57,940 nt of DNA from Neoechinorhynchus agilis. Lineage: Eukaryota > Animalia > Acanthocephala. Made by a program: the position numbers and the translations under genes. Positions 2 to 50,940 of the stretch are shown here, one piece after another. Position 1 is the stretch's first letter. The number at the start of each line of letters is the position of its first letter. The notes under the pieces are model-generated. The model made no database searches. It was given only the letters and a program-made list of their open reading frames with translations, and was not told where the DNA came from. The stretch spans positions 1 through 57,940 of the forward strand of contig JBMGUZ010000014.1 of the NCBI GenBank assembly GCA_051530055.1, written 5' to 3'.

Positions 2-3000
2 ATTCCTCAACACAACGACATCGTAAATCAACAGCATTTTCAACAGCAAATCGAAATTGACTACAACGTTGACCCTGACGTACCTCAAAACAATCGTCAA
101 CACCTTGAAATCAATGAAGCGCATTATAAGTCAACAAATGGAAAGAATTTACAGTCAAATGAAGGTTTGGCCAGTACTGAACAACTGCAAGCACCGAACA
201 CAAACTGCGACGCAATCAATACAAACTTTCCATCGTCGAAATCCATCATACTAAACTACGTCGCGCGCTCAGATTCTCCCTTGGAATGTGGCTTATGCTT
301 TGCTTGGTTTGTTGGTAACTCGAGAGTAAAATCGCTCGAACAACATTTGATCTCTTCCCATGGAATCGACGCAATTACTTGGCGATGTCCTCTCTGCTTA
401 AAATACGAACACAAAGAAACGCGAAGTATCGGAACGCACGTCAGATCTTGTTCAAAGAAATTTCCGGCTAGATATCGTGAGTTAAGCAGCAATTCCTCTC
501 CTTCAGCCGCTTCAAAAGATTTTCGATCTGTCTCCGTTGGACGCTTTGCGTACTGCGGAATTGATGAAGATTTTGTATCGTGCGATGTCTGTGGTCTGAA
601 GATCTACGGTTTGGGTCTTTGCAAGGCAATGGTCGACCACCTGAAGAAGGATCATAAATCGTCGGTTGTGGAAATAAAATGCGGCTTGTGCGATAACAGA
701 TATACTGACGTCGTGTCCGCTCGCAGTCACGTCAACCAATGCAGAAAAAAAGATGCCCTGAATAAAATGAACATAAATGCCGAGAAAATTACATCAAAAA
801 ATGCTAGCTCAAGAGATGCGACGTCAGAAGATACTACCTCAAAAGGTATTACCTCAGAAGCTACTACCTCAAAAGATTCTACCTCAAAAGATTCTACCTC
901 AAAAGATTCTACCTCAAAAGATACTACCTCAGTTTTACCTCGGACCGCAGAGGGTACAATCAAAGGTGACGACGCTGGCTGTATCAGCCGGATAATTCTC
1001 GAATCTGAATCAAGTTGCGGAAGTGTTCAGGCTTTTAATGCCGAAAACTACAACCCTTCGAGCCTCTTGTTTAATGATTATGGATCGGGAGTCGGCGATG
1101 TCTCGTTTCATAGTGGAAATGTTGCAACTTCGCAATCTTATCCGCCCCATGACATAAAAGTATGTACCGCGTTGCAGCAAACATCTTTTGCGGAAGAAGA
1201 AGTTGAATGCCAATCTGCATCTACCTTTACCGTCTCGGCGTGCTACGAATTCGTCCTTAATGTACTGGAGGAACGTGCTTTGCACCCACGGTATCAAAAC
1301 TTTCTTCGTGGTCTAGCAGCAGAACTACGAGACCATCCTGAACCAGTAACACAAGAGCTTATGGACTCTATTGCCGGGAAATACGAAGCTTACCTAAGAT
1401 GCGGCCGAACGCTAATGACCAATCATTCCAGATCAACGAAAGCAAAGAATATGGGCCTTCGGATTGTTAAACTGAAAGTCGGACCTCAAATGGTACTAAA
1501 CGCAATTGCCTTCCATGTTTTCGACAATCCCGCGCAGGCGCATATTGTACTCCGGCGGATCTTGGACAACATAGGACAAAACACTGAGTACTATTCTGCT
1601 ATCATGACGCGCGTAGACGATGCCAATGTTAGTTTACAGTGTATCGTAGACAACCTTAAGAAGGGTCGGATATTGTCTCCTATATTCTGCATGTGGGCAG
1701 CGGCCTCAACTTTTAATTGCGATTTTCAAATTTTGACGCCATATGCCACGAAAATGAATGTTATTCGATCACGAACCGTCGCATCGAAGTCTTTTAATGT
1801 CTGGATGGAGGACTCGAAGCAATTCCCGTGCGTTAGGTGCAGGTTCTTGAATATTTCTCAACGACGTGCCATGAACAAGAAAAGAAATAGAGCTCTATAT
1901 TTCGCCAACACTACTCAACTTGCGAAGGAAACATTTGAAAATGTCTCATTGAACAGCTGCAAAATCCCCGCAAAAATGATAACCGACCATTTTGCCGGAC
2001 TGTTTCAAAGCATTGATACTTGCAAACAAAGTGAAGTCAACAGAAATAATGAACTCGCCAAATCAAACTGGAAGTGGATTGATGCAGAGGAAATCAAGAC
2101 CGCCCAAAGGAACATAAAGACATCCAGCGCACTTGGACCAGACAAGATAAGTTGTCGGCAGGTAATGGCTTTTGACCCTCACGTTGTTGGTCTCGTCTTG
2201 ATTTACAATATGGCCATGGAGGTAGGTGGACCACCTAAGGCATGGAAAGAAAATCGAACAATATTGATACCAAAAAATGGTGCGGACGAGAAGGCACTAA
2301 AGTGTGTTAACGGTTGGCGGCCTATTACGATTTCATCTGTGCTCATGAGAATCATGCACAGAATCTTGCTTGCACGTCTCCGGCAGGAGATAGACCTTGA
2401 TGTCAGTCAAACGTGCTTTGATGTGGAAGCCTGCCACTCAAACTTACTTACGATTCGAGCGCTACTTCGGCAATCCAGAGCTGTTAAAAGATCAATTGCC
2501 ATGGCCATCCTTGATGTAAAGTCAGCGTTTGACACCATCTCACACGATTCACTAAGAAATGCGTTATGCCGAACAATTAAGGATGCAGCGACAAAAGAGT
2601 ATATATTAAATGCATTTTCGAGCAGCCACACTAAAATTTATACTTCTACTGGTCCTCCCTCGGAGCCCATACACTTCAACCGAGGCGTGAAGCAAGGAGA
2701 TCCACTTTCGCCATTTCTCTTCGCCCTATGCATTGACGAAGTTCTGCGAAAGGTCCGAGAAAGTAGAGCAGGTTACGTCGAGGGCGCCACGTATATTCCT
2801 GCAATTGTATACGCGGACGACATATTGTTAATCGGAAACGATCAAGAAGAGCTGCAGTCTATGATTAACGTTGTCTCAGAGGAATTAAAGCACAAAGGTC
2901 TGCTTCTGTCGCCAAAAAAATGTCGAACCTACATTCAGAACTATCAGCGTGGGAAGTTGTCTGAGGAGGTAACGGCTTCTGTCAAATTAGAAGGCACTTT

Positions 3001-4213
3001 GTTGGAATGCATAACCGAAGGAGACACAATTCAATACCTTGGAGGTACACCATGGGCAAAATGTTCAAAAGAGTCCATATGTCAAATGATTGACGAACTT
3101 GCGTTTCGCACAAAACAGGCCCAATTAAACCCAACGCAAGCGGTCCACTTATTAAATGACTATGGAATTCCTCGTGTAATCGCGCAGCTGCAAAATGCCC
3201 ATGACCTTTCGACAACGTGCTTAAGTCAAATCGACCAGTATTGGCGCAAGACGATTAAAAAGATTCTATTCTTGCCAGCTTACATAAACAATGGAGCCTT
3301 TCATCTTCCTCTCAATCAAGGCGGTATGGGATTTAGAGGAATCGAACACGAGGTTTTGAGCAGCAGGAAAAAGGCTCACTCAACGGTTACTGGAAAGTAC
3401 CCCGAACTAAACCACCACATCAAAGGAGGCGAGAATATTTCGACATATGAGAGTTCGGCTGAGCGAGGTGCTAACTTGAAGAAGGCCTGGGAAGGGGCCG
3501 CGACTCAATCTCTAGGTGCTCAACACTTCTGGGATGGAAACTTCGATCGCCGCCTGATCAGTTTCAGGTATCGTCAAAGCCGCCACAAGGAATACGTCGA
3601 AAACGTAAAGATGCGATACCAGCTTCTAGAGGTTGGTACAGTGCTTTCCAAGCTGGACAAAAATAGAACGAGGAAATGCCGACATTGTTGCGCAGCAGAT
3701 GAATCGTGCCTTCACGTGCTTAATGAATGCAACTACATCACGAGGGCAATGATATCACGTCATGATGCAGTGCAAAAGCGTCTCGTTTGGGCGATTAAAA
3801 GACGAAATCCTGCTTTTGAAGTCATGACCGAAAACAGAATACATGATCCTGGGGGAAATCTACACAAACCCGACCTCATCATTGTTGATCGGGAAAATGG
3901 CAGGATAACAATTGCCGACATCGCAATCTACTACGAAACGAACATCAATCGTGGAGAGGAAATAACAAAACAAAAAGAAGAAAAGTACCTCCCCATTTGC
4001 GATGTAGTAGCTGCGCAATACAACGTAGAGGAACGCAACGTAGAAACGCTAGGCATTGCAGTCGGCTCAAGAGGTAGCTTTTCAAAAACATTATTAAAAA
4101 GACTGCGTTCACTCAATTTAAACACTGGGTGCGCAATAAATATGTGCCGCACCGCTGCCGAAAAGAGTCTTCAAGTGTATCATACATTTATGGGACGAAA
4201 GCAAACCAAGTAA
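2..4213 (+). CDS. R2-like polyprotein (>=1403 aa): 4 zinc fingers, OTU-like domain, RT, CCHC knuckle, restriction-like endonuclease
   Basis: The track ORF 167-4213 frame is also open from base 2, so the true start is upstream. Motifs: CGLC..H....H, CPLC..H...C, CDVC..H....H, CGLC..H...C; WRPITISS; LDVKSAFD; QGDPLSP; YADD; YLG; CRHC..H....C; RHD; KPDLII..ADIAI; KEEKY. Confidence 0.95.
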   Translation: MPQHNDIVNQQHFQQQIEIDYNVDPDVPQNNRQHLEINEAHYKSTNGKNLQSNEGLASTEQLQAPNTNCDAINTNFPSSKSIILNYVARSDSPLECGLCFAWFVGNSRVKSLEQHLISSHGIDAITWRCPLCLKYEHKETRSIGTHVRSCSKKFPARYRELSSNSSPSAASKDFRSVSVGRFAYCGIDEDFVSCDVCGLKIYGLGLCKAMVDHLKKDHKSSVVEIKCGLCDNRYTDVVSARSHVNQCRKKDALNKMNINAEKITSKNASSRDATSEDTTSKGITSEATTSKDSTSKDSTSKDSTSKDTTSVLPRTAEGTIKGDDAGCISRIILESESSCGSVQAFNAENYNPSSLLFNDYGSGVGDVSFHSGNVATSQSYPPHDIKVCTALQQTSFAEEEVECQSASTFTVSACYEFVLNVLEERALHPRYQNFLRGLAAELRDHPEPVTQELMDSIAGKYEAYLRCGRTLMTNHSRSTKAKNMGLRIVKLKVGPQMVLNAIAFHVFDNPAQAHIVLRRILDNIGQNTEYYSAIMTRVDDANVSLQCIVDNLKKGRILSPIFCMWAAASTFNCDFQILTPYATKMNVIRSRTVASKSFNVWMEDSKQFPCVRCRFLNISQRRAMNKKRNRALYFANTTQLAKETFENVSLNSCKIPAKMITDHFAGLFQSIDTCKQSEVNRNNELAKSNWKWIDAEEIKTAQRNIKTSSALGPDKISCRQVMAFDPHVVGLVLIYNMAMEVGGPPKAWKENRTILIPKNGADEKALKCVNGWRPITISSVLMRIMHRILLARLRQEIDLDVSQTCFDVEACHSNLLTIRALLRQSRAVKRSIAMAILDVKSAFDTISHDSLRNALCRTIKDAATKEYILNAFSSSHTKIYTSTGPPSEPIHFNRGVKQGDPLSPFLFALCIDEVLRKVRESRAGYVEGATYIPAIVYADDILLIGNDQEELQSMINVVSEELKHKGLLLSPKKCRTYIQNYQRGKLSEEVTASVKLEGTLLECITEGDTIQYLGGTPWAKCSKESICQMIDELAFRTKQAQLNPTQAVHLLNDYGIPRVIAQLQNAHDLSTTCLSQIDQYWRKTIKKILFLPAYINNGAFHLPLNQGGMGFRGIEHEVLSSRKKAHSTVTGKYPELNHHIKGGENISTYESSAERGANLKKAWEGAATQSLGAQHFWDGNFDRRLISFRYRQSRHKEYVENVKMRYQLLEVGTVLSKLDKNRTRKCRHCCAADESCLHVLNECNYITRAMISRHDAVQKRLVWAIKRRNPAFEVMTENRIHDPGGNLHKPDLIIVDRENGRITIADIAIYYETNINRGEEITKQKEEKYLPICDVVAAQYNVEERNVETLGIAVGSRGSFSKTLLKRLRSLNLNTGCAINMCRTAAEKSLQVYHTFMGRKQTK
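800..930 (+). repeat. 15-bp coding minisatellite (ACCTCAAAAGATTCT; TSKDS repeats) in the Ser/Thr-rich linker
   Basis: Tandem acctcaaaagattct units visible; protein reads TSKDSTSKDSTSKDTTS. Confidence 0.9.
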
Positions 4214-4315
4214 CAGAATATACAAACTAAGATTGAACAAAAAGAAGGACTATAAAGTATAAAATTGATACAATTTTGAATGCTGAGTGATTTATTTTAC
4301 TAATAAATTTGTGAC

Positions 4316-4548: not shown

Positions 4549-6055
4549 TAAATAGTAATGTAAATTCAGTCAATTTTAACGATTTCAATAGCTTCAGTTT
4601 TATTGGCATTCTCGAAGGAGAAAGTAAATGGCTTGCATCGTTTATGAGAGATCTAGGCAAAAGCGGCGTTAACGCAGAGTACGAAAAAAAATGGGCGGAG
4701 GCAAAAACACAGGCAAACGGATATCAGGCCTTTACCAACGGATTCGCAGACCCAAATGCTATCATTCAGATACAGACAGGGCCATCACAGGCAATACACG
4801 GAATTGATAAAAATGCGAGCTGACTTAGAGGTTGGTGCCGTTATGGCAAGGATCTCAAACAATAGGACAAAAGCCTGTCGCCATTGCGCCCATCAAACAG
4901 AACGTGCTTGCACGTAATTAATCAGTGTGACTTCTCGACGGAAGCAATGATTAAAAGACACGACGACGTCGTGAGTCTTTATAGGCGCACTAAATGCAGT
5001 TGAAGCAAAATCCGCCAAAAGAGATTCAATCCGAGGCATCAGTTACACTGTCGATAGAAAAAATCACATTATGGACGACGGCGGCAACTTACACAAGTCC
5101 GACCTCATTGTGAGGACAAACATAAATGATCACAGATAGTGGTGATGTGGCGGTCTACTACGAGACCTCATTGGAACAAGCAGCAGTTATGGCGAAGATC
5201 ATATTTTGTTAGTCAGTAAGTGATAAGGCCGACTTTAACAAGCTCGATGTTGCGGTTACAGAATTGCGAAGTATCGGATTGTCCTTCAATCCAGCAAAAT
5301 GCGTTTCGTACAGCCACAGATTTTGTCAAGGCTCCAAGTCTCGGCCTCAAAATTATAAAGCTAAAGAAAAATTCAACAATGGTACTGGTGACCGCCGCCT
5401 TTCTCGTCCTCGAGAAACCTAGACAAAGGAGGAGAGTAAAAGACCGCAGCTTGGACCCTGTTTCACTTCATATAGTAAAAATGATTCTTGATGCTAATCT
5501 AACAGTAAATGAGACACTGGATGCTACTAAAAATTACAACGAACTATCAGTTCACTTCATCTTGAGGGCCGCAGCGACTGCCTATCAATGCGATTTTGTC
5601 GGGCAAACTCCAAGCGACGGTGTTCCTCTTCGAATTCGATCTCGCACAGCCACAAATTCATCATTTGGATTAATGAGTCAGGTACTTATCCCTGCGAAAG
5701 TTCTCGAGACCTCAAATCAAAGCAGTGACACGACCCTATTAAAAGACGTTAACCTTCTAAACGACTATGCAATTCCATCCTTAATGGTTAAGCTCGAAGC
5801 CTCATGCGACATCGCCCCGCTAATCTCAGACGTAAAGACGAGCAATGGAGGTGCAGACTAAAGAAGATTCTTAAACTTACAAGGAACTTAGGGGAAGGAG
5901 CTTTCGATGAGTGTGAGCTGAGTCTAATCTCGCCAAGTAATGCTTTAGTGTGGTAGATGAATAAAGCGAAAATAACTTCCATTCAAGGTACAGATGCTTT
6001 CTGGAGACGGAGAGCGATATCCTCCATCGATCAGAAGGCTCCATTGATAGGGAAA
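4549..6055 (+). pseudogene. Scrambled R2-like cassette (family D), copy 1
   Basis: Fragments in the order linker-CCHC-RLE, RT motifs 5-7, OTU-like, thumb (LLNDYAIP), HPRY-type helix; frameshifted. Confidence 0.85.
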
Positions 6056-11019: not shown

Positions 11020-11925
11020 AATGGAGCATTCCGATCGACGGAGAATATCTCTCTAAATCTCAAGAAAACTTCTGTATCTTGGATGGCGATTATTGTTGCT
11101 TAGCTCATCCGCCACGCTCTCATACGCCTCGATTACCGCAAGCACAGTCGACCGGATAAAATTGATACCCCTTCACACCTGCGTTTTGACTGTGCCGCAT
11201 GATTCATAGACAAGAACTGGCTCTGCACTTCCCTGGCACCTACGAAAGTAGGTAACGATACAGAAGGTAGGGGGTTGCAGCACTCTCCCATGCCTTCAGT
11301 TTTATCCATCGTTCGATCGAACTCGTACTTTTGAACCGATTCGCATCCTCTTATGTCATTGACGAGTTCGGGGTGTGTTCAAGCGACGGTTGTCATGGCC
11401 TTCTTCCTGTTGCTCATGACTTCGTGCTCGATTCCCCTTATCCCCATTCCGCCTTGATTGCGAGGGAGATTAAGCGCGCCATTATTGATGTAAGCCGGTA
11501 AAAATATAATCTTTTTAATGGCCTTCTGCCAATATCGGTCAATTGGGTTGAGGTCTGTTATCGACATGTCATGGGCACTTTGTAGCTTCGGGATTACATG
11601 AAGGGAATTCCGTAGTCATTCAATAGGTCGATCGCTTGCGTTGAGCGTGTTTTGTGCAAAACGTGAGGTCTTCAATAATACGGCATACGGGGGATTATTG
11701 CGATAGCAGTTGAGGACGTAGTGATACACTGCGGCTCTGCCATTGGTTGCGTTTTCTTTAATACATCCTTTTCCTGACATTGGTTCACATGGCTGCGTGC
11801 AGATACGACATCGTTATATTTTTTATGACACGAGCCGCATTTAATCGCGACGATCGATCATTGGTGGTTCGTCTTTAAGCGGTCGACAATTGCACTGCAG
11901 GCGACGCGTTAGTGCATTGGTTAAC
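11020..11925 (-). pseudogene. Deleted R2-like remnants (ZF3-4, thumb, HPRY helix); mirror of 18480-19390
   Basis: ORF 11379-11567 is close to the family A thumb (IKKIIFLPAYINNGAL.LP.NQGGMG.RGIEHEV). Confidence 0.8.
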
Positions 11926-11929
11926 GTTC

Positions 11930-14900
11930 ATCGTGAACCAACCGCTAGACCTAACGTACTAACTTGAAATCCGTCGACTTTGTATTCAGCTGCTACAATG
12001 GGAATTAAGGCCTTATACTTATCTTCTTTTGCCTTCATGACTTCCTCTGTACGATCAATTCCGGACTCATAGTAAACCGCAATATAGGTAAACCACAATG
12101 TCCGCAATAAATATTTATTTGCTTCTCGTATTTTCGATTATTTAGTCTGGTTTGAATAAGTTTCTTGCTTTATCATAATATCGGTAATTTTGGCGACTAA
12201 TCATGCTTCCTTCGTGTTTTCTGCTAGGCTGCCATACTAGTCTTCGTTGAACTGTATCGTGGAATTTAGTCATTGAGTTGGATGAGTGCTCGCACACTTT
12301 TAACACGTGAGCGCAAGTTTCGAGCGGAGCCGTGCAATGGTGGCATTGGTTCGTTCGATTCTTGTCAAAACGATTTAGCACCGATCCGACTTCAAGCAGC
12401 TGAAATCTGAGTTTTACTTGTTCTACATGGCCAGTGTGCCTGCCTTGTCGTTTGCGAATGGATAAAAGACGCCGGTCTACGTTTCCGCTTGAAACCGTCG
12501 ATTCCCAAGATTTGTGTACCTACAGCTTTCTACTTTTCAATTAGAAATTTGTTCAACGCGTTCTTCCGGTTCTCGCTGGTATTTCCAGGATTGTCCCGAA
12601 TGATCTTCAAGTATTCATTAACCTGGCCAATTTCCTTTGCAACGTCAACGCATGGCTGAAATTTGCTAAGTACACAACTCACTGATATATTTCGTGGTAA
12701 AATGAACGGAAACCAAGAGCGCCCAATGAAAGCGGTAGAAGAAAAGCCTTCATCTGAGGCATTATTCGGTATCTGAAGTCTCTTTAGTTTGGTTCTCCAC
12801 TTGACATCGATGCGGACAAGATCAGAGAGCGGTATGTTTCAGGCCGCTGCCAGTTTCGCCAAGAATATGGGCGCGGCGTAGTCATTTGTAAGATGTGCGG
12901 TTTGGGAGCGGTGGAGTCGCGCGCTTTTCATTTCCTTGAAAAAACCTGCCTACTTCGCCCATTGCTTCAGTCAACGATGTGCCTCGCCACGGTTTTGTTG
13001 TCAACGTATCTGTAGGCATAATAGTAGCACTTTTCGCTTGATAGCGCTAATCCTTTTCCATTAAGACCATCAGTCATTGCATTGATTATAATTTGTAAGT
13101 TTTTATCATTGTCGGCCATGAAAGGCACGTCATCTGCATAGACCAAGTGCGAAAATGAGAAATCGTTCTTCAAGTGGCACCCAAGATTGATTTCTTTTAT
13201 GGCAACAAGTGTATCGTCAAGGCACATGGCAAAAGGAAAGTGAGAGGTGACCCCTTTGCTCGAACCTTTTGAACTTTATCGGGTTAGACAACGTTATTGT
13301 TCATCCTTAACCTTGTGTGAATTGACCGGTACAGCGCCATAATGTAATTGCGAATGTACTTCAGGCAGTTTTTATTTCGAAGGGCTGCATCTAAAGCACT
13401 ATGGGAAATGGAGTCGAACGCCGACGTTATATCCAATACTGCAATTGATAATGGTCGCCTATTTGATCGGCACTGTCTCAGGACCGCTCTCAGGGTCAAC
13501 AGATTGCTAGAGCAGGCAGACGAGTCAAATGCCGTCTGACCTAGATCAAGGCTGTAAATGTCCCGTAATCGTTTTAGGAGAACCAGATGAAAAATGCGCA
13601 ACAATATAGAGGAAATCGTTATCGGCCTCCAACCGCTGAGTGACCTTAATTTGTTGTTGGACGCATTTGCCTTTGGAATAAGAATCGTTTTAGATTCATT
13701 AAGAACTTCGGGAGGGCTTCCGGTTTGCAAAACTGTGTTTAGTAGGACCGTTATACCACAGAGGGTCGGATCGAAGGATCTGATTTGACGTATTGTTATC
13801 TTATCGGGACCTGAAGCGGAGGATGGTTTTATTCCTTTGATTGCGTCGTCGACTTCATTGTGCGTCATTAACGGTATGGCATTGGTGCAGATTTGTTCTT
13901 CATATATATTGGTTGCAGGGTTATCCGAAGGACCTTGAAAAAGGGCATAATAATGCTGAAAAACCTCATTAGGATTAAGACTGCATTCTTTTCGTTGCGC
14001 ACCTTTGAATGTTTCGTTTGCCAGCCCAAGTGTACTTCATTGAAATACAGCGCCTTGTTTCTTTTCTCATTGAGAGAACGTGCATGGCTCCAGATGCCCA
14101 AGCTTCTTACGCATGGAAATATACCGTTCTCATCCTCCCACAGAGTAAACACATTTGATGCGGTCCCGGCGCACATGATTCTCTTTGGACGCAGGCATTT
14201 GTTGCTGTAGATTACAAAATCGCAGGTGAACACAGCAGAAGCGGCGTACAAAATAAGCCAATTCGATAGGGCCTGATCCCTATGTAAATACTGAAAACAC
14301 GCTTCCAACGAGGAATTTGCATCGGGCACGTTAAGGGCAACCTTTTCGTAGTAACTCCAGTTATTTATGAACTCTGTCTTGACTTTATTGAGTACACCGC
14401 GCCACGATGCAGGACAGCCACAAGTGTGGAAGGCAATTGAATTGAATATAAGCTTAGAACCTTGTCGCAATTTCACGATTTTTAGGCCTAATTGTCGCGC
14501 GAACGAGACTGGCGAGCTGGTTGTATTCTTACCACAATGTAAATGCGAGCTGTAACGCTCAGCCGCTTCGTTTAACCAATCCTGGTTAAAATCTGTTTGA
14601 AATCTTAGTAAATGCATTCCTTTTTCAAGAAATGCTTTATATCGAGGGTGCAACGACTTTGCTTTTAGGCTGTCGACAATCGTCTCGTATGCAAATTCCG
14701 GGGTAAAGATTGCAGATATGCTGGATGGTTTTTCTGCGTGTTCGGAATAGTTGCAAGGTTCGTGACTTAGACAGTTGGCATTCATTTCCGGTGCATCATC
14801 TGCTTCCTCGACTAGGCTGATAGCGGCTCGGTTACATCTTCTTCAGGTATGGCATCCATAACATTTGCATGGTTGAACGAGGTAGATGATTTGGTTGATG

Positions 14901-15138: not shown

Positions 15139-18100
15139 TGCGCCTCTTGCAACAGTGAAAAACTTGCCTCTATTGTATCAGCACGCGCTCACTACACACA
15201 TTGCTCCCGACGCCTCACAAAAGTCAAGGATGGAGTTTCTAATGTGGACAACGCTCTGGGTTGCAGCAATCGGGATAATCTTGGGAGCGCTGAGCGGAAC
15301 CATGAACCGATTCGATCAAGGCAGAACAGCGCTCTTATGAATTCGTACATGGCTGATTGCGATGTTGCAACTGAATGCGTTGGTGTTCCAATTTTATCAC
15401 CTACCTCATCTTGCGTTGACGTTCAATTTGGATCACCTACCTCACCTTGCGTTAATATTCAAATTGGATCACCTACCTCATCTTTCCGGTCTACCTCATC
15501 AACCAAATCATCTACCTCGTCCAACCATGCAAATGTTATGGATGCCATACCTGAAGAAGATGTAACCGAAGCCGCTATCAGCCTAGTCGAGGAAGCAGAT
15601 GATGCACCGGGAATGAATGCCAACTGTCTAAGTCACGAACCTTGCAACTATTCCGAACACGCAGAAAAACCATCCAGCATATCTGCAATCTTTACCCCGG
15701 AATTTGCATACGAGACGATTGTCGACAGCCTAAAAGCAAAGTCGTTGCACCCTCGATATAAAGCATTTCTTGAAAAAGGAATGCATTTACTAAGATTTCA
15801 AACAGATTTTAACCAGGATTGGTTAAACGAAGCGGCTGAGCGTTACAGCTCGCATTTACATTGTGGTAAGAATACAACCAGCTCGCCAGTCTCGTTCGCG
15901 CGACAATTAGGCCTAAAAATCGTGAAATTGCGACAAGGTTCTAAGCTTATATTCAATTCAATTGCCTTCCACACTTGTGGCTGTCCTGCATCGTGGCGCG
16001 GTGTACTCAATAAAGTCAAGACAGAGTTCATAAATAACTGGAGTTACTACGAAAAGGTTGCCCTTAACGTGCCCGATGCAAATTCCTCGTCGGAAGCGTG
16101 TTTTCAGTATTTACATAGGGATCAGGCCCTATCGAATTGGCTTATTTTGTACGCCGCTTCTGCTGTGTTCACCTGCGATTTTGTAATCTACAGCAACAAA
16201 TGCCTGCGTCCAAAGAGAATCATGTGCGCCGGGACCGCATCAAATGTGTTTACTCTGTGGGAGGATGAGAACGGTATATTTCCATGCGTAAGAAGCTTGG
16301 GCATCACAAGGAGCCATGCACGTTCTCTCAATGAGAAAAGAAACAAGGCGCTGTATTTCAATGATACCTCCAGGCTGGCAAACGAAACATTCAAAGGTGC
16401 GCAACGAAAAGAATGCAGTCTTAATCCTAATGAGGTTTTTCAGCATTATTATGCCCTTTTTCAAGGTCCTTCGGATAACCCAGCAACCACTATATATGAA
16501 GAACAAATCTGCACCAATGCCATACCGTTAATGACGCACAATGAAGTCGACGACGCAATCAAAGGAATAAAACCATCCTCCGCTTCAGGTCCCGATAAGA
16601 TAACAATACGTCAAATCAGATCCTTCGATCCGACCCTCTGTGGTATAACGGTCCTACTAAACACAGTTTTGCAAACCGGAAGCCCTCCCGAAGTTCTTAA
16701 TGAATCTAAAACGATTCTTATTCCAAAGGCAAATGCGTCCAACAACAAATTAAGGTCACTCAGCGGTTGGAGGCCGATAACGATTTCCTCTATATTGTTG
16801 CGCATTTTTCATCGGGTTCTCCTAAAACGATTACGGGACATTTACAGCCTTGATCTAGGTCAGACGGCATTTGACTCGTCTGCCTGCTCTAGCAATCTGT
16901 TGACCCTGAGAGCGGTCCTGAGACAGTGCCGATCAAATAGGCGACCATTATCAATTGCAGTATTGGATATAACGTCGGCGTTCGACTCCATTTCCCATAG
17001 TGCTTTAGATGCAGCCCTTCGAAATAAAAACTGCCTGAAGTACATTCGCAATTACATTATGGCGCTGTACCGGTCAATTCACACAAGGTTAAGGATGAAC
17101 AACCAACCGTTGTCTAACCCGATAAAGTTCAAAAGAGTTCGACAAGGGGGTCACCTCTCCCCTTTCCTTTTTGCCATGTGCCTTGACGATACACTTGTTG
17201 CCATAAAAGAAATCAATCTTGGGTGCCACTTGAAGAACGATTTCTCATTTTCGCACTTGGTCTATGCAGATGACGTGCCTTTCATGGCCGACAATGATAA
17301 AAACTTACAAATTATAATCAATGCAATGACTGATGGTCTTAATGGAAAAGGATTAGCGCTATCAAGCGAAAAGTGCTACTATTATGCCTACAGATACGTT
17401 GACAACAAAACCGTGGCGAGGCACATCGTTGACTGAAGCAATGGGCGAAGTAGGCAGGTTTTTTCAAGGAAATGAAAAGCGCGCGACTCCACCGCTCCCA
17501 AACCGCACATCTTATAAATGACTACGCCGCGCCCATATTCTTGGCGAAACTGGCAGCGGCCTGAAACATACCGCTCTCTGATCTTGTCCGCATCGATGTC
17601 AAGTGGAGAACCAAACTAAAGAGACTTCAGATACCGAATAATGCCTCAGATGAAGGCTTTTCTTCTACCGCTTTCATTGGGCGCTCTTAGTTTCCGTTCA
17701 TTTTACCACGAAATATATCAGTGAGTTGTGTACTTAGCAAATTTCAGCCATGCGTTGACGTTGCAAAGGAAATTGGCCAGGTTAATGAATACTTGAAGAT
17801 CATTCGGGACAATCCTGGAAATACCAGCGAGAACCGGAAGAACGCGTTGAACAAATTTCTAATTGAAAAGTAGAAAGCTGTAGGTACACAAATCTTGGGA
17901 ATCGACGGTTTCAAGCGGAAACGTAGACCGGCGCCTTTTATCCATTCGCAAACGACAAGGCAGGCACACTGGCCATGTAGAACAAGTAAAACTCAGATTT
18001 CAGCTGCTTGAAGTCGGATCGGTGCTAAATCGTTTTGACAAGAATCGAACGAACCAATGCCACCATTGCACGGCTCCGCTCGAAACTTGCGCTCACGTGT

Positions 18101-18475: not shown

Positions 18476-18479
18476 CGTT

Positions 18480-24429: not shown

Positions 24430-25941
24430 CTATCAATGGAGCCTTCTGATCGATGGAGGGTATCGCTCTCCGTCTCCAGAAAGCATCTGTACCTTGAATG
24501 GTAGTTATTTTTGCTTTATTCATCTACCACACTAAAGCATTGCTTGGAGAGATTAGACTCAGCTCACACTCATCGAAAGCTCCCTCGCCTAAGTTCCTTG
24601 TAAGTTTAAGAATCTTCTTTAGTCTGCACCTCCATTGCTCGTCTTTACGTCTGAGATTAGCGGGACGATGTCGCATGAGGCTTCGAGCTTAACCATTAAG
24701 GATGGAATTGCATAGTCGTTTAGAAGGTTAACGTCTTTTAATAGGGTCGTGTGACTGCTTTGATTTGAGGCCTCGAGAACTTTCGCAGGATAAGTACCTG
24801 ACTCATTAATCCAAACGATGAATTCGTGGCTGTGCGAGATCGAATTCGAAGAGGAACATCGTCGCTTGGAGTTTGCCCGACAAAATTGCATTGATAGGCA
24901 GTCGCTGCGGCCCTCAAGTTGAAGTGAACTGATAGTTCGTTGTAATTTTTAGTAGCATCCAGTGTGTCATTTAATGTGAGATTTGCATCAAGAATCATTT
25001 TTACTATATGAAGTGAAACAGGGTCCAAGATGCGGTCCTTTACTCTCCTCCATTGTGTAGGTTTCTCGAGGACGACAAAGGCGGCGGTCACCAGTACCAT
25101 TGTTGAATTTTTCTTTAGCTTTATAATTTTGAGGCCGAGACTTGAAGCCTTGACAAAATCTGTGGCTGTACGAAACGCATTTTGCTGGATTGAAGGACAA
25201 TCCAATGCTTCGCAATTCTGTAACCGCAACATCGAGCTTATTCTGAAGTCCGGCCTTATCCTTACTGACCAACAAAATATCATCTTCGCCATAACTGCTG
25301 CCCGTTCCAATGAGGTCTCATAGTAGACCGCCACGTCTACTATATAAACTCGATCATTTATGTTTGTCCTCACAATGAGGTCGGGCTTGTGTAAGTTGCC
25401 GCCGTCGTCCATAATGTGATTTTTTCTATCGACGGTATAACTGATGCCTCGGATTGAATCTCTTTTGGCGGATTTTGCTTCTTCTGCATTTAATGCGTCT
25501 ATAAAGACTTTCTCGACGTCGTCGTGTCTTTTAATCATTGCTTCCGTCGAGAAGTCACACTGATTAATTACGTGCAAGCACGTTTCTGTTTGATGGGCGC
25601 AATGGCGACAGGCTTTTGTCCTATTGTTTGAGATCCTTGCCATAAGGGCACCAACCTCTAGAAGTTCATCTCGCATTTTTATCAATTCCGTGTATTGCCT
25701 GTGATGTCCCTGTCTGTATCTGAATGATAACATTTTTGGGTCTGCGAATCCGTTGGTAAAGGCCTGATATCCGTTTGCCTGTGTTTTTGCCTCCGCCCAT
25801 TTTTTTCGTACTCTGCGTTAACGCCGCTTTTGCCTAGATCTCTCATAAACGATGCAAGCCATTTACTTTCTCATTCGAGAATGCCAATAAAACTGAAGCT
25901 ATTGAAATCGTTAAAATTGACTGAATTTACATTACTATTTA
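24430..25941 (-). pseudogene. Scrambled R2-like cassette (family D), copy 2
   Basis: ORF 24738-25733 runs CRHC..H....C, RHD, KPDLIV..VDVAVYYE, then OTU-like sequence. Confidence 0.88.
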
Positions 25942-46009: not shown

Positions 46010-48315
46010 AAAGATCTTCGCCGGACTTAAAATCTTAAGCGGCAAGTAAGTGAAGTGCTTTTGATAGAGCGTCACGTGGTTATCTTACTCGACGGGGTCT
46101 GAGCTCTTCTGTCTACGTCGTTCGCAGAGCACAGCCCTTTTAACCCGTGCCAATTCACGCTCCCAAATGTTATCTTTATTTTTAATTTAAAGTCGCTCCT
46201 GGGGGTTATTGACACCCCTAAACACGTTTTTTTAAGTCTCCGCGAGATTTGCTTCGTCTTTCAGCGAGACGCAGTTTTTTCGACGCTTCTTCCGTGTTTC
46301 TGTGACGTGATTTAGAAATTTTATTTACGTATTTTATCAATTTAATAGGGTCTCCGATAGGAATTTCTCGTAGATTTTAGATAATTAATAACAGTTTTAT
46401 TTTCTTTTAAGCTTTTATCCAGTTCTTATGAGTTCCTCAATAGACCGCCAGACTCCTGCTCTCTCGATGATCGAAGATGGTTATCCGATCACGGCCGAAA
46501 ATAACTTAGAATGTATTCTGTGCAATTTTCAGGCTATGGGCAGAACGAGGCACAGTCTCTTTCTTGAGCATATGAAAGAAAGTCATGCGCGAGGGCCAAT
46601 CTCATGGGTGTGTAAAATCTGCAACAATTTTCGGAGCGCAGCCCCAGGAAGCGTTGGAGCGCATACTCGCCAATGCAAGATTCTTAATGTCTCTGCATAT
46701 AGAGAGATCTTGAGAAAAATTGAGGAGGGTAACAAAACCTTTCCAGTGCTCAATGAGGCCGCAATTACCTACGCAGGGGGAACTTCACCAGCCGTCTGCC
46801 CGAGCTGCGATGAAAAAATTTTGGGTCGTGGGCAGTACAATTCTCTGGAAAACCACCTTAGAGTATGCCATTTGGCGAAGAGTATCACGTATATTTGCGC
46901 CCTCTGTAACACCCACTCCACTGCTTCGATTTACTCCGCCAGAGCGCATTATTCACAGTGCTTTAAGCGAGTTAAGGTAAAAGACGCGGACACTGGGGTA
47001 ACAACAAGTGAAGCCCAAGAAAGGAAAGACGGTTTATTTTGCGATAGGACCACTTACTGTGTCAGTGAGCACGCGGAAAGACCGGATATTTATGCCCCCG
47101 AAGAGGATGCCGTTGTCTCTCGTAGTGCAAGCCTCCCCAGCACGGAAAAAACACATTTATTCGGGGACGGGACTCATTTGTCTGACGGTCGCGACCCCAG
47201 TACACATGCGCGCGATGCTGCTGAGCAGGGTGTGGAGAGCCGTGAGCTGTCCTGCCCGCCGGTCGGCTTTGTGCCGTCTGCAGGTCACCTTCGTGAGTTC
47301 GTAGAGGTGCTGCAAGGTCCTACTTCCACTTCGCCACGCGAGTCGCGGAATATCTCGAGTCGACTTTTCGATTCTGTCGCGTCTGCAGCGCACATTTGGC
47401 TTGAAAACAGTGACGAGTTGTCGACTCCTTGGGTGCGACGTCCCGATTCTTTGGCGTCCAGTTTTTCGACAGGCGGTACGCTAATTGAACATGGAGAGAG
47501 AAATGAATCACAATTTAGTATCGAAGAGGCTTATGAGGGCGTCGTGAAGTCTCTTAAAAAGAATGGCCTTCACCCCCGATATAGGTTCTATCTGGAAACG
47601 GAGCGCAACGTCTTACGCCATTCAGAAGGACCGATCGATAAAGGCTTTGTCGAGATGGCTGCTACACGGTATGAAGATTACCTAAGATGCGGACGCAGTA
47701 AGGTGAGTCCCGAAGTCTCGAAAGCCAGACAAGCCGGCCTTAGAATAATCAAATTGAGAAGAGTTGCAACACAATCGCTTTGCGCGATCGCGTACCATGT
47801 CTACCGAAACCCAGCACGATGGAAGAAAGTCTCTGAAAAATTGGTCAGTGAGATTAACAGTAACATAGGATACTATCGTTTGATAGCTAATAATGTAGCT
47901 TAAGGATGATTCTAACTGGAGGCCCATAACCATATCTTCGCTGTTAATGAGAATTCTTCATCGCGTGATCTTAGCTAGGCTTAAGAAACAGGTCAGTCTC
48001 CACAAATCTCAGACAGGATCGGAAAATACAGCATGCATTTCAAACATACTCGTTCTGCGCGACATGCTGAAACAAAAGAGGGCACAACAAAAACCAATGG
48101 CAGTAGCCATGCTGGATATCAGGGCCGCTTTTGATACAGTATGTCACAAAACAATCGAAAAGGCGTTGAGAGATCACAACTGTTCGAACTATTTAAGCCG
48201 ACATTTGATGAACGTTTTCACCTCATCCTATACGCGAATCCATCTTCCAGGATCAAGCCCTTCGCAGCCTATTAGGTTTGACCAAGGCGTCAAGCAAGGA
48301 GATCCGCTTTCGCCG
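46010..48315 (+). mobile_element. R2-like family C 5' part (putative 5' UTR, 4 ZF, HPRY helix, partial OTU-like) plus an RT motif 2-4 fragment
   Basis: ORF 46428-47903 stops inside the OTU-like domain; then NWRPITISS...LDIRAAFD...QGDPLSP (47905-48315). Confidence 0.88.
46428..47903 (+). CDS. N-terminal 491 aa of an R2-like protein (truncated)
   Basis: CILC..H....H, CKIC..H...C, CPSC..H....H, CALC..H...C; LHPRY; GLRIIKL..AIAYHVY. Confidence 0.85.
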   Translation: MSSSIDRQTPALSMIEDGYPITAENNLECILCNFQAMGRTRHSLFLEHMKESHARGPISWVCKICNNFRSAAPGSVGAHTRQCKILNVSAYREILRKIEEGNKTFPVLNEAAITYAGGTSPAVCPSCDEKILGRGQYNSLENHLRVCHLAKSITYICALCNTHSTASIYSARAHYSQCFKRVKVKDADTGVTTSEAQERKDGLFCDRTTYCVSEHAERPDIYAPEEDAVVSRSASLPSTEKTHLFGDGTHLSDGRDPSTHARDAAEQGVESRELSCPPVGFVPSAGHLREFVEVLQGPTSTSPRESRNISSRLFDSVASAAHIWLENSDELSTPWVRRPDSLASSFSTGGTLIEHGERNESQFSIEEAYEGVVKSLKKNGLHPRYRFYLETERNVLRHSEGPIDKGFVEMAATRYEDYLRCGRSKVSPEVSKARQAGLRIIKLRRVATQSLCAIAYHVYRNPARWKKVSEKLVSEINSNIGYYRLIANNVA

Positions 48316-49426: not shown

Positions 49427-50940
49427 TAAATAGTAATGTAATTTCAGTCAATTTTAACGATTTCAATAGCTTCAGTTTTATTGGCATTCTCGAAGGAGAA
49501 AGTGGCTTGCATCGTTTATGAGAGATCTAGGCAAAAGCGGCGTTAACGCAGAGTACGAAAAAAAATGGCGGAGGCAAAAACACAGGCAAACGGATATCAG
49601 GCCTTTACCAACGGATTCGCAGACCCAAAAATGTTATCATTCAGATACAGACAGGGCCATCACAGGCAATACACGGAATTGATAAAAATGCGAGCTGAAC
49701 TTCTAGAGGTTGGTGCCGTTATGGCAAGGATCTCAAACAATAGGACAAAAGCCTGTCGCCATTGCGCCCATCAAACAGAAACGTGCTTGCACGTAATTAA
49801 TCAGTGTGACTTCTCGACGGAAGCAATGATTAAAAGACACGACGACGTCGTGAAAGTCTTTATAGGCGCACTAAATGCAGTTGAAGCAAAATCCGCCAAA
49901 AGAGATTCAATCCGAGGCATCAGTTACACCGTCGATAGAAAAAATCACATTATGGACGACGGCGGCAACTTACACAAGTCCGACCTCATTGTGAGGACAA
50001 ACATAAATGATCGGGTTTATATAGTAGATGTGGCGGTCTACTATGAGACCTCATTGGAACGGGCAGCAGTTATGGCGAAGATGATATTTTGTTAGTCAGT
50101 AAGGATAAGGCCGGACTTCAGAATAAGCTCGATGTTGCGGTTACAGAATTGCGAAGCATCGGATTGTCCTTCAATCCAGCAAAATGCGTTTCGTACAGCC
50201 ACAGATTTTGTCAAGGCTTCAAGTCTCGGCCTCAAAATTATAAAGCTAAAGAAAAATTCAACAATGGTACTGGTGACCGCCGCCTTTCTCGTCCTCGAGA
50301 AACCTACACAATGGAGGAGAGTAAAGGACCGCAGCTTGGACCCTGTTTCACTTCATATAGTAAAAATGATTCTTGATGCAAATCTCACATTAAATGACAC
50401 ACTGGATGCTACTAAAAATTACAACGAACTATCAGTTCACTTCATCTTGAGGGCCGCAGCGACTGCCTATCAATGCAATTTTGTCGGGCAAACTCCAAGC
50501 GACGATGTTCCTCTTCGAATTCGATCTCGCACAGCCACGAATTCATCGTTTGGATTAATGAGTCAGGTACTTATCCCTGCGAAAGTTCTCGAGGCCTCAA
50601 ATCAAAGCAGTCACACGACCCTATTAAAAGACGTTAACCTTCTAAACGACTATGCAATTCCATCCTTAATGGTTAAGCTCGAAGCCTCATGCGACATCGT
50701 CCCGCTAATCTCAGACGTAAAGACGAGCAATGGAGGTGCAGACTAAAGAAGATTCTTAAACTTACAAGGAACTTAGGCGAAGGAGCTTTCGATGAGTGTG
50801 AGCTGAGTCTAATCTCTCCAAGCAATGCTTTAGTGTGGTAGATGAATAAAGCAAAAATAACTTCCATTCAAGGTACAGATGCTTTCTGGAGACGGAGAGC
50901 GATATCCTCCATCGATCAGAAGGCTCCATTGATAGGGAAA
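49427..50940 (+). pseudogene. Scrambled R2-like cassette (family D), copy 3
   Basis: ORFs 49565-50095 (CCHC/RLE), 50089-50376 (RT 5-7) and 50132-50746 (OTU-like, thumb). Confidence 0.88.

What the first reader, a model, noticed from the sequence alone, without database searches (positions are those of the whole stretch)
1459..1850. OTU-protease-like pseudo-domain inserted in the N-terminal extension of R2-site retrotransposons
Seen: between the LHPRY...YLRCG helix and the pre-RT segment, families A, B, C and D all carry a ~130-aa block. Family A reads GLRIVKL..PQMVLNAIAFHVFD..IVLRRILDNI.QN.EYY...CMWAAASTFNCDFQI...FNVWMEDSKQFPCVR. By eye this aligns with the OTU consensus GL.I..V.GDGNCLFRAIA.QLYG...VR..V.YI..N.E.F...WGG..EI.A.S..Y...I.VY...I.L.Y...HY.SV. 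The catalytic Cys position is M, L, Q and M in the four families, and the His is absent where the domain end is preserved (A, B). Established: canonical R2 proteins have no such domain, and the RLE element NeSL-1 carries a different protease (Ulp1). Inference: a captured, catalytically dead OTU fold retained across old lineages, perhaps binding ubiquitin, chromatin or RNA. I cannot confirm it is undescribed.
Basis: partly seen in the sequence, partly recalled or inferred. Interest (0 to 1): 0.9.

Follow-up and report, generated by a model that had tools for sequence, protein, structure and literature searches.

The report
Dead OTU domain inside R2 retrotransposons
The ribosomal-DNA jumping genes (R2 elements) of a thorny-headed worm carry, just before their reverse transcriptase, a well-conserved domain with the fold of an OTU deubiquitinase that has lost every catalytic residue; I found this R2 architecture in no paper I could search.

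Summary
Window 1412-1843 (residues 416-559 of ORF 167-4213) is a roughly 140-aa block that recurs in four R2-site families in the window and at 108 or more places in the genome.

The OTU reading also holds.
- Two template-free AlphaFold models hit only OTU domains. The best is OTUD3, at Z 17.5 with 139 of 141 residues aligned, and all top 25 chains of an exhaustive search are OTU.
- A sequence profile has OTUD5 as its best PDB hit (E 0.003).
- Language-model features point to PF02338.

Sequence membership in Pfam OTU is not met: no member reaches the cut-off.

The catalytic positions are replaced in all 15 lineages compared. Cys is M, L, Q or A. His is never present. The Asp/Asn position is an invariant Pro. 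No conserved Cys/His pair exists anywhere in the block.

The domain is under coding constraint. Codon-position identity is 0.51/0.59/0.30, against 0.32/0.37/0.27 in the neighbouring linker. It marks one fully supported clade of R2-like elements. That clade includes Neoechinorhynchus agilis, Pomphorhynchus laevis and five samples whose organism I could not name.

These elements have two ZF3:ZF2-type finger pairs and no detectable Myb. R2 homology starts right after the OTU domain.

Function is untested; I favour a non-catalytic scaffold or binding role. The same scan reported this domain earlier on other pieces of this genome.

The parts
167..4213 (+). Full-length R2-type ORF (family A), 1348 aa. 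The frame is open upstream to the window start.
   Evidence: RVT_1 covers residues 701-959. R2Tg matches at E 1e-81 from residue 570 on.
281..457 (+). Zinc-finger pair 1 (C2H2 + CCHC), of the ZF3:ZF2 type of A-lineage R2.
   Evidence: hhalign to the canonical R2 N-termini, probability 96.4%. Internal duplication with pair 2, E 1e-6.
575..748 (+). Zinc-finger pair 2 (C2H2 + CCHC), a duplicate of pair 1.
   Evidence: hhalign probability 95.6% to the same template columns.
785..1162 (+). Ser/Thr-rich low-complexity linker, not conserved between families.
   Evidence: 16% identity with 53% of positions aligned. Codon-position identity 0.32/0.37/0.27.
1232..1399 (+). Three conserved helices before the OTU domain, with an LHPRY motif and an RY..YL.CG motif. 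The fold class is unassigned.
   Evidence: AF2 pLDDT 81-86. Alignment A7. No PDB, Pfam, atlas or R2-Myb match.
1412..1843 (+). OTU-fold domain, catalytically inactive (residues 416-559).
1490..1492 (+). Codon at the catalytic-Cys position, Met442 here. It sits at the N-terminus of the first long helix.
   Evidence: HMMER alignment to OTUD5. The helix starts here in both models. The column reads M/L/Q/A.
1820..1831 (+). Last beta-strand, where the His and Asp/Asn of OTUs lie. It reads Q-F-P-C here. The Cys is invariant and the Pro nearly so (14 of 15), and no family has a His.
   Evidence: Hairpin in model 2. OTUD3 aligned range. Column table.
1874..2266 (+). RT N-terminal extension, where homology to canonical R2 begins.
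   Evidence: R2Tg 9dou and LINE-1 ORF2p match this part.
2267..3043 (+). Reverse transcriptase (RVT_1).
3617..4210 (+). CCHC knuckle and restriction-like endonuclease region.
   Evidence: Weak zf-RVT hit. Motifs read in the translation. 50% identity among families.
4214..4313 (+). 3' UTR, ending at the junction with 28S rDNA at the classical R2 site.
15895..16305 (+). OTU block of a second family (ORF 15091-17436). Leu sits at the Cys position.
14093..14503 (-). OTU block of the inverted near-duplicate of that family.
5328..5725 (+). OTU block of a third family, in an internally deleted copy. The last strand is frameshifted at about 5657. Met sits at the Cys position.
50213..50634 (+). A second copy of the third family, with the same frameshift.
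24807..25151 (-). A third copy of the third family.
47733..47900 (+). N-terminal 56-59 residues of the OTU block of a fourth family, truncated. Gln sits at the Cys position.

Best explanation
**What it is (shown).** The block is a genuine OTU-fold domain. It is nearest to the OTUD1/3/5/6 type and is built into the single ORF of a lineage of R2 retrotransposons of thorny-headed worms. The genome is Neoechinorhynchus agilis. The order of parts is:
1. Two ZF3:ZF2-type finger pairs.
2. A low-complexity linker.
3. Three conserved helices.
4. The OTU domain.
5. The RT N-terminal extension, RT, thumb, CCHC knuckle and restriction-like endonuclease.

The elements sit at the classical R2 site of 28S rDNA.

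**Inactive (shown from sequence).** The catalytic Cys, the His and the third triad residue are all replaced, and there is no other conserved Cys/His pair. So it cannot work as a papain-type deubiquitinase.

**Origin and selection (shown).** All bearers form one clade, so it was probably acquired once. It has been kept by purifying selection over a time long enough to saturate synonymous sites.

**How it works (inferred).** It is a non-catalytic module of the R2 ribonucleoprotein.
- About 0.4: it is a rigid scaffold and binding surface. It takes the place of the ZF1-Myb-spacer segment of ordinary R2 proteins, sets the finger pairs relative to the RT core, and contacts target DNA or template RNA.
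- About 0.3: it binds ubiquitin, a ubiquitin-like protein or an E2 without cleaving.
For: **Fold.**
- AF2 model 1 (7 sequences, core pLDDT 81-94): the Foldseek top 50 are all OTU, led by OTUD5 (E 1e-5) and OTUD3 (TM 0.69).
- AF2 model 2 (12 sequences; all five models have mean pLDDT 69-73, with 84-94 in the OTU part): an exhaustive comparison with 48,161 chains gives OTUD3 at Z 17.5, rmsd 3.4 and 139 of 141 residues aligned. OTUD1 scores 15.3, Otu2 14.8 and nairovirus OTUs 12.5-14.1, and ranks 1-25 are all OTU.
- The atlas fold search agrees.

**Sequence.**
- A profile of the block has OTUD5 as its best PDB sequence, E 0.003. The alignment places the catalytic Cys on the M/L/Q column.
- Language-model neighbours are 62% OTU, score 0.92.

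**Inactivity.** Column table over 15 lineages.

**Selection.**
- 38% identity with 99% of positions aligned, against 16% and 53% in the linker.
- Codon-position identity 0.51/0.59/0.30, close to the RT extension (0.52/0.62/0.31). The linker gives 0.32/0.37/0.27.
- Seven intact ORFs of 1068-1403 aa.

**One clade.** SH-aLRT 100 and branch length 0.96, on a tree built without the OTU columns.

**R2 identity and site.**

**No Myb.** The finger pairs align at 96% probability to canonical R2 fingers, yet nothing aligns to the Myb columns.

**Charge.** The core is net +2 to +7 in 14 of 15 lineages. The host's active OTU1 is -9.
Against: **Weak sequence membership.**
- No member reaches the Pfam OTU cut-off. 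Only 1 of 15 gives E 0.055, among noise of the same strength.
- hhalign against a thin 5-sequence OTU1 alignment gave 1.8% probability.

**Limits of the fold evidence.**
- The fold rests on predicted models. In the first run only one of five models was confident.
- The exact residue at the His position is uncertain by one place (Q552 or F553), because I had no coordinates to superpose.

**Function.**
- No experiment or successful prediction bears on function.
- The charge argument is weak, since one lineage (P0130) is -1.
- An invariant Cys (C555) next to the former active site is unexplained.
Confidence: 0.85

Rival explanations
1. Ubiquitin-system decoy or reader. The dead OTU keeps a ubiquitin, ubiquitin-like or E2-binding surface. 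It would act without catalysis, for instance by shielding the R2 protein, reading ubiquitylated nucleolar chromatin, or damping ubiquitin signalling at the break the element makes. This rivals only the functional part of the best explanation.
For: - The fold is closest to ubiquitin-binding OTUD enzymes, several of them solved with ubiquitin.
- Catalysis-independent OTU function is known from OTUB1 acting on UBC13 (my own knowledge; OTUB1/E2 complexes are among the structural hits).
- OTU domains recur in transposable elements: Helentrons and Ginger1 (PMC2836005; PMC4067079), and plant MULE clusters.
Against: - The catalytic positions are all replaced and no other Cys/His pair is conserved. The positions conserved in at least 80% of rows are mostly hydrophobic, Pro, Ala or Ser, which I read as core residues without mapping them onto the model. 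I could not show that a ubiquitin-binding surface is kept.
- The domain has turned basic, whereas the host OTU1 is acidic.
Confidence: 0.3
2. The block is just the ordinary, fast-evolving R2 N-terminal spacer, and the OTU likeness is chance or a modelling artefact.
For: Pfam does not recognise it. hhalign to an OTU1 alignment was insignificant. Four of the five models in the first AF2 run were poor.
Against: - Two separate models from different alignments give only OTU hits, up to Z 17.5 over a whole domain.
- A sequence profile independently ranks OTUD5 first among 177,635 PDB sequences, with a register that matches the fold.
- Language-model features agree.
- Canonical R2 proteins have no homologous stretch.
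Confidence: 0.03
3. It is still an enzyme with a relocated active site, for example one using the invariant Cys555 as nucleophile.
For: Cys555 is invariant in all 15 lineages and lies in the strand that carries the catalytic His in OTUs.
Against: No His, and no other conserved general base, exists anywhere in the block. Cys555 is the only column with C or H in at least 60% of rows. Its position within the last beta-strand and the nearly invariant Pro before it suggest to me a structural role; I could not check whether it is buried.
Confidence: 0.04
4. It is a neutral relic of an old capture with no present function.
For: All catalytic residues are lost.
Against: - Synonymous sites are saturated, while first and second codon positions stay 51% and 59% identical.
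- There are no indels across seven families.
- The adjoining linker shows what neutral decay looks like in the same ORFs.
- The domain is kept in at least two acanthocephalan classes.
Confidence: 0.05

Closest known systems
A-lineage R2 retrotransposons (e.g. R2Tg, PDB 9dou; also 9nl2 and 9nl3)
   Same: - A single ORF with N-terminal zinc fingers, an RT with an N-terminal extension, a thumb, a CCHC knuckle and a restriction-like endonuclease.
- The same 28S insertion site.
- phmmer E 1e-81 from residue 570 onward.
- Finger pairs homologous to ZF3:ZF2.
   Different: - There is no detectable ZF1-Myb module.
- The ZF3:ZF2-type pair is duplicated.
- A three-helix region plus an OTU-fold domain lies directly before the RT extension.
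- On the RT tree the clade sits on a long branch apart from all 43 other R2-like proteins sampled.
OTUD-type deubiquitinases (OTUD3, OTUD1, OTUD5, Otu2/OTUD6; Pfam PF02338, MEROPS C85)
   Same: The same fold over the whole domain: Z 14.8-17.5 and 137-139 aligned residues for OTUD3, OTUD1 and Otu2, and Z 11.1 with 120 aligned for OTUD5. The sequence motifs keep the same order: a GL.I..L strand, then the helix that normally starts with Cys, then an AAA..y..dF helix and strand, then a terminal hairpin.
   Different: - Cys, His and Asp/Asn are all replaced.
- Identity is only 6-16%.
- It scores below the Pfam cut-off.
- It is basic rather than acidic.
- It is fused inside a retrotransposon protein.
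Non-LTR ORF2p-like proteins with N-terminal DUB domains (OTU in Symbiodinium necroappetens, Josephin in Haematococcus Dualen/RandI elements), PMC13405545
   Same: A deubiquitinase-fold domain lies N-terminal to a non-LTR reverse transcriptase.
   Different: Those are algal or dinoflagellate elements of other clades, set off by 2A-like peptides and described as DUB domains. Here the domain is fused in frame within an animal R2, with no 2A peptide noted, and is inactive. I did not compare the sequences.
NeSL-1 (C. elegans), a restriction-like-endonuclease element with a Ulp1 protease domain
   Same: A site-specific RLE non-LTR element carrying a cysteine-protease-fold domain of the ubiquitin or SUMO system (my own knowledge; for Ulp1 and OTU in other transposons see PMC2836005).
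   Different: It has a different fold family (Ulp1, C48), described as a protease domain, in a different clade with a different target.
OTU domains of DNA transposons (Helentron ORFs, Ginger1 transposases, plant MULE-OTU proteins)
   Same: An OTU fold recruited by mobile elements.
   Different: In Helentrons the catalytic residues are reported conserved (PMC4067079). Those are DNA transposons.
Pseudo-deubiquitinases (FAM105A/OTULINL; the Jab1/MPN domain of Prp8)
   Same: These are DUB folds without catalysis, used as binding or scaffold modules. FAM105A is among the structural hits (6drm, Z 8.8). From my own knowledge, Prp8 joins an RT-like domain, an RLE-like domain and an inactive MPN domain in one protein.
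   Different: FAM105A is a stand-alone host protein. The Prp8 domain has another fold (MPN) and is C-terminal. No homology is implied; these are analogies for mechanism only.

Membership tests
OTU (Pfam PF02338 / MEROPS C85) | OTU alpha/beta fold over the whole domain. | tested here: met
   On predicted models only. OTUD3 gives Z 17.5, rmsd 3.4 and 139 of 141 residues aligned, and ranks 1-25 are all OTU. The Foldseek top 50 are all OTU. Atlas TM 0.71-0.77.
OTU (Pfam PF02338 / MEROPS C85) | Score over the Pfam gathering cut-off (23.3 bits). | tested here: not met
   No hit for family A. Of 15 lineages, one reaches E 0.055. The host OTU1 does pass at 36 bits.
OTU (Pfam PF02338 / MEROPS C85) | Profile-level sequence similarity to known OTUs. 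| tested here: inconclusive
   A profile of the block has OTUD5 as its best PDB sequence, E 0.003. hhalign against a thin 5-sequence OTU1 alignment gave only 1.8% probability.
OTU (Pfam PF02338 / MEROPS C85) | Catalytic Cys at the N-terminus of the first long helix. | tested here: not met
   The column reads M/L/Q/A in 15 lineages, with no Cys within 2 residues.
OTU (Pfam PF02338 / MEROPS C85) | Catalytic His in the last beta-strand, plus an Asp/Asn two residues on. | tested here: not met
   No His at positions 550-556 in any lineage. Pro554 is nearly invariant (14 of 15) and Cys555 invariant. The register is uncertain by one residue.
OTU (Pfam PF02338 / MEROPS C85) | Deubiquitinase activity or ubiquitin binding. 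| not testable with these tools
   The complex prediction with host ubiquitin gave no verdict and counts neither way.
R2 retrotransposons | A single ORF with an RT, and a C-terminal CCHC knuckle plus restriction-like endonuclease. | tested here: met
   RVT_1 E 1e-31. R2Tg E 1e-81 and R2Bm E 3e-39. The CCHC and PD..D..K motifs can be read in the translation.
R2 retrotransposons | Insertion at the conserved R2 site of 28S rDNA. | tested here: met
   The 3' junction lies at about 4313/4314, next to the R2-site sequence. The same holds for 8 other full or partial copies in the genome and for locus L003 from another assembly.
R2 retrotransposons | N-terminal zinc finger(s). | tested here: met
   Two C2H2+CCHC pairs, hhalign probability 96% and 95.6% to canonical ZF3:ZF2.
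R2 retrotransposons | A Myb domain after ZF1. | tested here: not met
   In the hhalign run that recognises the fingers, nothing aligns to the Myb columns (W...E...L..L) of 46 canonical R2 N-termini. The pre-OTU helices give 0.3% probability. Pfam cannot see the Myb even in canonical R2, so its silence is uninformative. The fold of the three helices was not searched alone.

The most novel reading that the evidence does not exclude
The dead OTU domain is a catalysis-independent effector on the host ubiquitin system. It would bind an E2~ubiquitin conjugate or ubiquitylated nucleolar chromatin, as OTUB1 does with UBC13. In that way it would suppress, or exploit, ubiquitin-dependent DNA-damage signalling at the rDNA nick that the element itself makes. 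The duplicated finger pairs alone would provide 28S site recognition without any Myb.
Probability: 0.12. Interest if true: 0.85.

Novelty: new variant of a known kind. Interest (0 to 1): 0.6.

Why it matters
R2 elements are the best-understood site-specific non-LTR retrotransposons, and they are being engineered for transgene insertion. Their N-terminal ZF1-Myb module is treated as the core of target recognition.

A whole clade here still lands at the same 28S site yet has no detectable Myb. It has duplicated ZF3:ZF2-type fingers, and a conserved inactive deubiquitinase fold in front of the RT. So the R2 target-recognition architecture is more plastic than the current A-D scheme allows. The clade also offers a natural test of what the segment between the fingers and the RT does.

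It would also be a rare example of a pseudo-enzyme of the ubiquitin system kept by selection inside a retrotransposon protein. I found no mention of it in full-text searches, including:
- the broadest recent R2 survey (PMC12247875), whose main text mentions no OTU and no acanthocephalan or rotifer;
- the N. agilis genome paper (PMC12690905), which does not mention OTU, rDNA or reverse transcriptase.

The same scan had already noted this domain on other pieces of this genome. This window therefore adds copies and tests rather than a first sighting.

Tried and rejected
- **Word-indexed protein search of the block.** Blank. The exhaustive HMMER search was needed.
- **Single-sequence Pfam and a PDB search with the narrow 7-sequence profile.** Nothing.
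- **hhalign of the block against an OTU1 alignment.** Probability 1.8%. The search meant to supply OTU sequences returned only 5 proteins, so the template was thin. I count this as inconclusive.
- **Complex prediction of the OTU domain with the host's ubiquitin.** No verdict (score 0.01, controls not run). This is not evidence either way.
- **Expression.** The look-up of sequencing runs found four runs of one study holding 99% of the element's sampled words, but their RNA label is only a guess.
- **Read laying.** Two pattern searches overlapping them were made before it.
- **Myb by Pfam.** Rejected as a test, because eight canonical R2 N-termini also give no Myb hit.
- **The three pre-OTU helices.** No match in PDB sequences, Pfam or the atlas.
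- **Naming the organisms.** Searches for assemblies GCA_028748445, GCA_028748465 and GCA_028748485 and for runs SRR34340284 and SRR6291331 found no paper.
- **dN/dS between close copies.** Not possible for family A, which is single-copy at the DNA level. I used codon-position identities across families instead.
Full report
**Setting.**
The window is rDNA-rich eukaryotic DNA. It holds a complete SSU rRNA gene and several 28S pieces, and it is packed with full and broken copies of R2-like elements.

The genome (46.2 Mb, 102 contigs) is that of the acanthocephalan Neoechinorhynchus agilis.
- Its contig lengths (19,375,080, 16,375,937 and 137,866 bases) are those of the NCBI records that name this species.
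- Its OTU1 gene product is 100% identical to a named N. agilis protein.

**The observation.**
ORF 167-4213 (+) encodes 1348 aa, with RVT_1 at residues 701-959.
- 15895-16305 (+) and its inverted near-duplicate at 14093-14503 (-);
- three copies of a third family at 5328-5681 (+), 50213-50557 (+) and 24807-25151 (-);
- a truncated copy of a fourth family at 47733-47900 (+).

Identity between families is 34-39%, with E-values down to 1e-40. In the whole genome a profile of the block matches at least 108 places, many inside open frames of 1000-1400 aa.

One detail differs. The third-family copies still hold the last strand of the block, in another reading frame.

**Is it an OTU fold?**
Sequence methods on single sequences see nothing. 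Five other tests agree, although some share a model or a resource.
- (i) AlphaFold2 without templates, on the 7-sequence alignment, gave one confident model (core pLDDT 81-94). Its order of elements is a strand, five helices and a four-stranded sheet. Foldseek against the PDB returned OTU domains in all 50 top rows: OTUD5 at E 1e-5, OTUD3 at TM 0.69, then OTUD1 and nairovirus OTUs.
- (ii) A second model covers residues 333-700, from a 12-sequence alignment of deeper lineages. It was consistent across all five runs (mean pLDDT 69-73, and 84-94 in the OTU part). VIA-align against all 48,161 PDB representatives, which does not use Foldseek, gave OTUD3 at Z 17.5 (rmsd 3.4, 139 of 141 residues), OTUD1 at 15.3, yeast Otu2 at 14.8 and viral OTUs at 12.5-14.1. 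Ranks 1-25 were all OTU-family chains. The aligned range is model 84-227, which is residues 416-559.
- (iii) The ESM Atlas fold search again gave OTU clusters, TM 0.71-0.77.
- (iv) A profile of 16 block sequences, searched against all PDB sequences, ranks OTUD5 first (E 0.003) over 100 residues, in a register that fits the fold.
- (v) Language-model features give 62 of 100 neighbours in PF02338 clusters, score 0.92.

Against this:
- no member reaches the Pfam cut-off;
- hhalign against a thin OTU1 alignment was insignificant.

I conclude that the fold and distant homology are well supported. Formal sequence membership in Pfam OTU is not met.

**Is it dead?**
The OTUD5 alignment puts the catalytic Cys on the residue that starts the first long helix in both models. 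That column is M, L, Q or A in 15 lineages, and no Cys lies within two residues.

The terminal hairpin reads KSFNVWME / KQFPCVR in family A. It corresponds to the strand pair that carries the His and the Asp/Asn of OTUs (with the OTUD3 range).
- The His position is Q552 or F553; the register is uncertain by one. It never holds a His.
- The next position is a nearly invariant Pro (14 of 15).
- This is followed by an invariant Cys.

Cys555 is the only column in the block with Cys or His in at least 60% of rows, so there is no alternative Cys/His pair. A papain-type mechanism is excluded on sequence grounds. The role of the invariant Cys is unexplained.

**Is it kept by selection?**
The genome holds at least seven intact full-length families, only 35-53% identical to each other.

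Mean pairwise amino-acid identity by region:

| Region | Identity | Share of positions aligned |
|---|---|---|
| Low-complexity linker | 16% | 53% |
| Pre-OTU helices | 32% | 93% |
| OTU block | 38% | 99% |
| RT extension | 42% | 97% |
| RT | 48% | 100% |
| Endonuclease region | 50% | 90% |

Nucleotide identity by codon position:

| Region | Position 1 | Position 2 | Position 3 |
|---|---|---|---|
| OTU block | 0.51 | 0.59 | 0.30 |
| RT extension | 0.52 | 0.62 | 0.31 |
| Low-complexity linker | 0.32 | 0.37 | 0.27 |

Synonymous sites are saturated while the protein is conserved. That is the signature of long purifying selection.

**Distribution and origin.**
The exhaustive HMMER search of 1.84 billion representatives found only 14 proteins.
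- The named ones come from N. agilis and Pomphorhynchus laevis, two acanthocephalan classes.
- All hits that are long enough have the finger or RT context, and none is a Pfam OTU.

Weaker members turned up among the closest RT relatives, which come from one more assembly of the same accession series and from two sequencing runs, all without an organism name:
- P0001 and P0002;
- the contig of P0003, where the block lies frameshifted upstream of the called gene.

Among the 120 RT relatives, only P0004, P0001, P0053 and P0002 matched the block HMM at E 0.001 or better; the best of the rest scored E 0.42.

A tree of 53 proteins was built on the region downstream of the OTU. It puts the ten OTU-bearing rows on one side of a branch with SH-aLRT 100 and length 0.96. 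That fits a single acquisition, though the root is not inferred.

The nearest enzymes by structure are the OTUD1/3/5/6 group. I could not identify a donor.

**Architecture and R2 identity.**
Element A ends about 100 bases after its stop codon, at the classical R2 site of 28S. Eight other copies in the genome, and the element of another assembly (L003), have the same site sequence after their 3' ends.

Homology to solved R2 proteins begins at residue 570 for R2Tg, 9nl3 and 9nl2 (E 1e-81 to 1e-75), and at residue 627 for R2Bm. That is directly after the OTU domain. The structural search aligns R2Tg and LINE-1 ORF2p only to that later part.

The N-terminus holds two tandem C2H2+CCHC finger pairs.
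- They are related to each other (E 1e-6).
- Both are homologous to the ZF3:ZF2 pair of canonical R2 proteins, at 96% and 95.6% hhalign probability.
- In that same comparison nothing aligns to the canonical Myb columns. The three conserved helices before the OTU give no match.

So these elements reach the R2 site without a detectable ZF1-Myb module. The helices plus the OTU domain occupy the segment that holds Myb and spacer in other R2 proteins. The fold of the three helices was not tested alone.

**How it probably works.**
What is shown: an OTU fold, without catalytic residues, under selection, at a fixed place between the DNA-binding fingers and the RT core. The rest is inference.

I favour a non-catalytic structural and binding module of the ribonucleoprotein (about 0.4).
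- It sits where Myb and spacer sit in canonical R2.
- The positions conserved in at least 80% of rows are mostly hydrophobic, Pro, Ala or Ser, which look like core residues. I did not map them onto the model.
- Its core is net +2 to +7 in 14 of 15 lineages, against -9 for the host's active OTU1. Its flanks are more basic still.

The main alternative (about 0.3) is binding of ubiquitin, a ubiquitin-like protein or an E2 without cleavage. OTUB1 is a precedent (my own knowledge). My only test of this, a complex prediction with host ubiquitin, returned no verdict.

**What is known.**
OTU domains are known in Helentrons, Ginger1 transposases and plant MULEs. A 2026 preprint notes an OTU and Josephin DUB domains N-terminal to ORF2p-like proteins of a dinoflagellate and a green alga (PMC13405545). 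NeSL-1 carries a Ulp1 domain (my own knowledge).

Full-text searches for OTU with R2, non-LTR or restriction-like endonuclease found no report of an OTU domain in R2.
- The main text of the broadest recent R2 survey mentions no OTU, deubiquitinase, Acanthocephala or rotifer (PMC12247875).
- The N. agilis genome paper does not mention OTU, rDNA or reverse transcriptase (PMC12690905).

The library lacks most subscription journals and Repbase, so prior description cannot be excluded.

Earlier agents of this scan reported the same dead OTU domain, and the missing Myb, on other pieces of this genome. I reached the OTU result before reading those notes, and I tested the Myb claim myself.

**Limits.**
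- All structures are predictions.
- The His register is uncertain by one residue.
- There is no expression evidence.
- Five source organisms are unnamed.
- Function is untested.

**Verdict.**
This is a real and apparently undescribed variant of the R2 architecture. Interest is 0.6.

Noticed in passing
window 36060-44978 (-): The rDNA unit here is aberrant. On the minus strand the SSU (39740-37872) runs straight into 28S model position 665 (37909-36567). ITS1, 5.8S, ITS2 and the first 660 or so positions of 28S are therefore missing. The 28S then breaks between model positions 2345 and 2390, the region of the R2 site. This may be a deleted unit or an assembly artefact.
   Followed up: no
window 11322-19080: Two copies of the second family face each other as a large inverted repeat around about 15.2 kb: 11322-14773 on the minus strand and 15625-19080 on the plus strand. 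Each is followed by the same short fragments of other R2 pieces.
   Followed up: no
window 27419-29761 (-) and 33617-34456 (-): Two further reverse-transcriptase ORFs (780 and 279 aa, RVT_1 E 7e-28 and 8e-18). They are only about 32% identical to family A over a short stretch, and the OTU block profile does not match them. They appear to belong to a different retroelement family living in the same rDNA region.
   Followed up: partly
G000:C1:296155-297282 (-): The host polyubiquitin gene (five 76-aa repeats) lies inside the R2-rich, rDNA-like first 360 kb of contig 1, between R2 copies at about 248 kb and 315 kb. This is probably coincidence, but it is curious next to elements that carry a ubiquitin-system fold.
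   Followed up: no
G000:C1:4751786-4919943 and C1:11692421-11722900: Partial, stop-ridden R2 fragments with the OTU block lie far from the rDNA clusters. There are five copies spaced 20-60 kb apart, and three copies spaced about 15 kb apart. The latter (L019) still carry the 28S R2-site sequence, so pieces of inserted rDNA seem to have been dispersed or tandemly amplified.
   Followed up: partly
G000, loci L006, L009, L012-L015 and window 167-4213: At least seven intact R2 families, only 35-53% identical, coexist in one 46-Mb genome. Family A is single-copy at the DNA level. The R2-site sequence follows the ORF in four of the six fetched families (L006, L012, L014, L015), and with two mismatches in family A. 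No exact match was found in the L009 and L013 loci. This is an unusually rich set of ancient paralogous R2 lineages.
   Followed up: partly
window 167-4213, residue 555 (1829-1831) and homologues: An invariant Cys, preceded by a nearly invariant Pro (14 of 15 lineages), sits in the strand that carries the catalytic His in active OTUs. It is the only conserved Cys or His in the domain. Its role is unexplained.
   Followed up: partly
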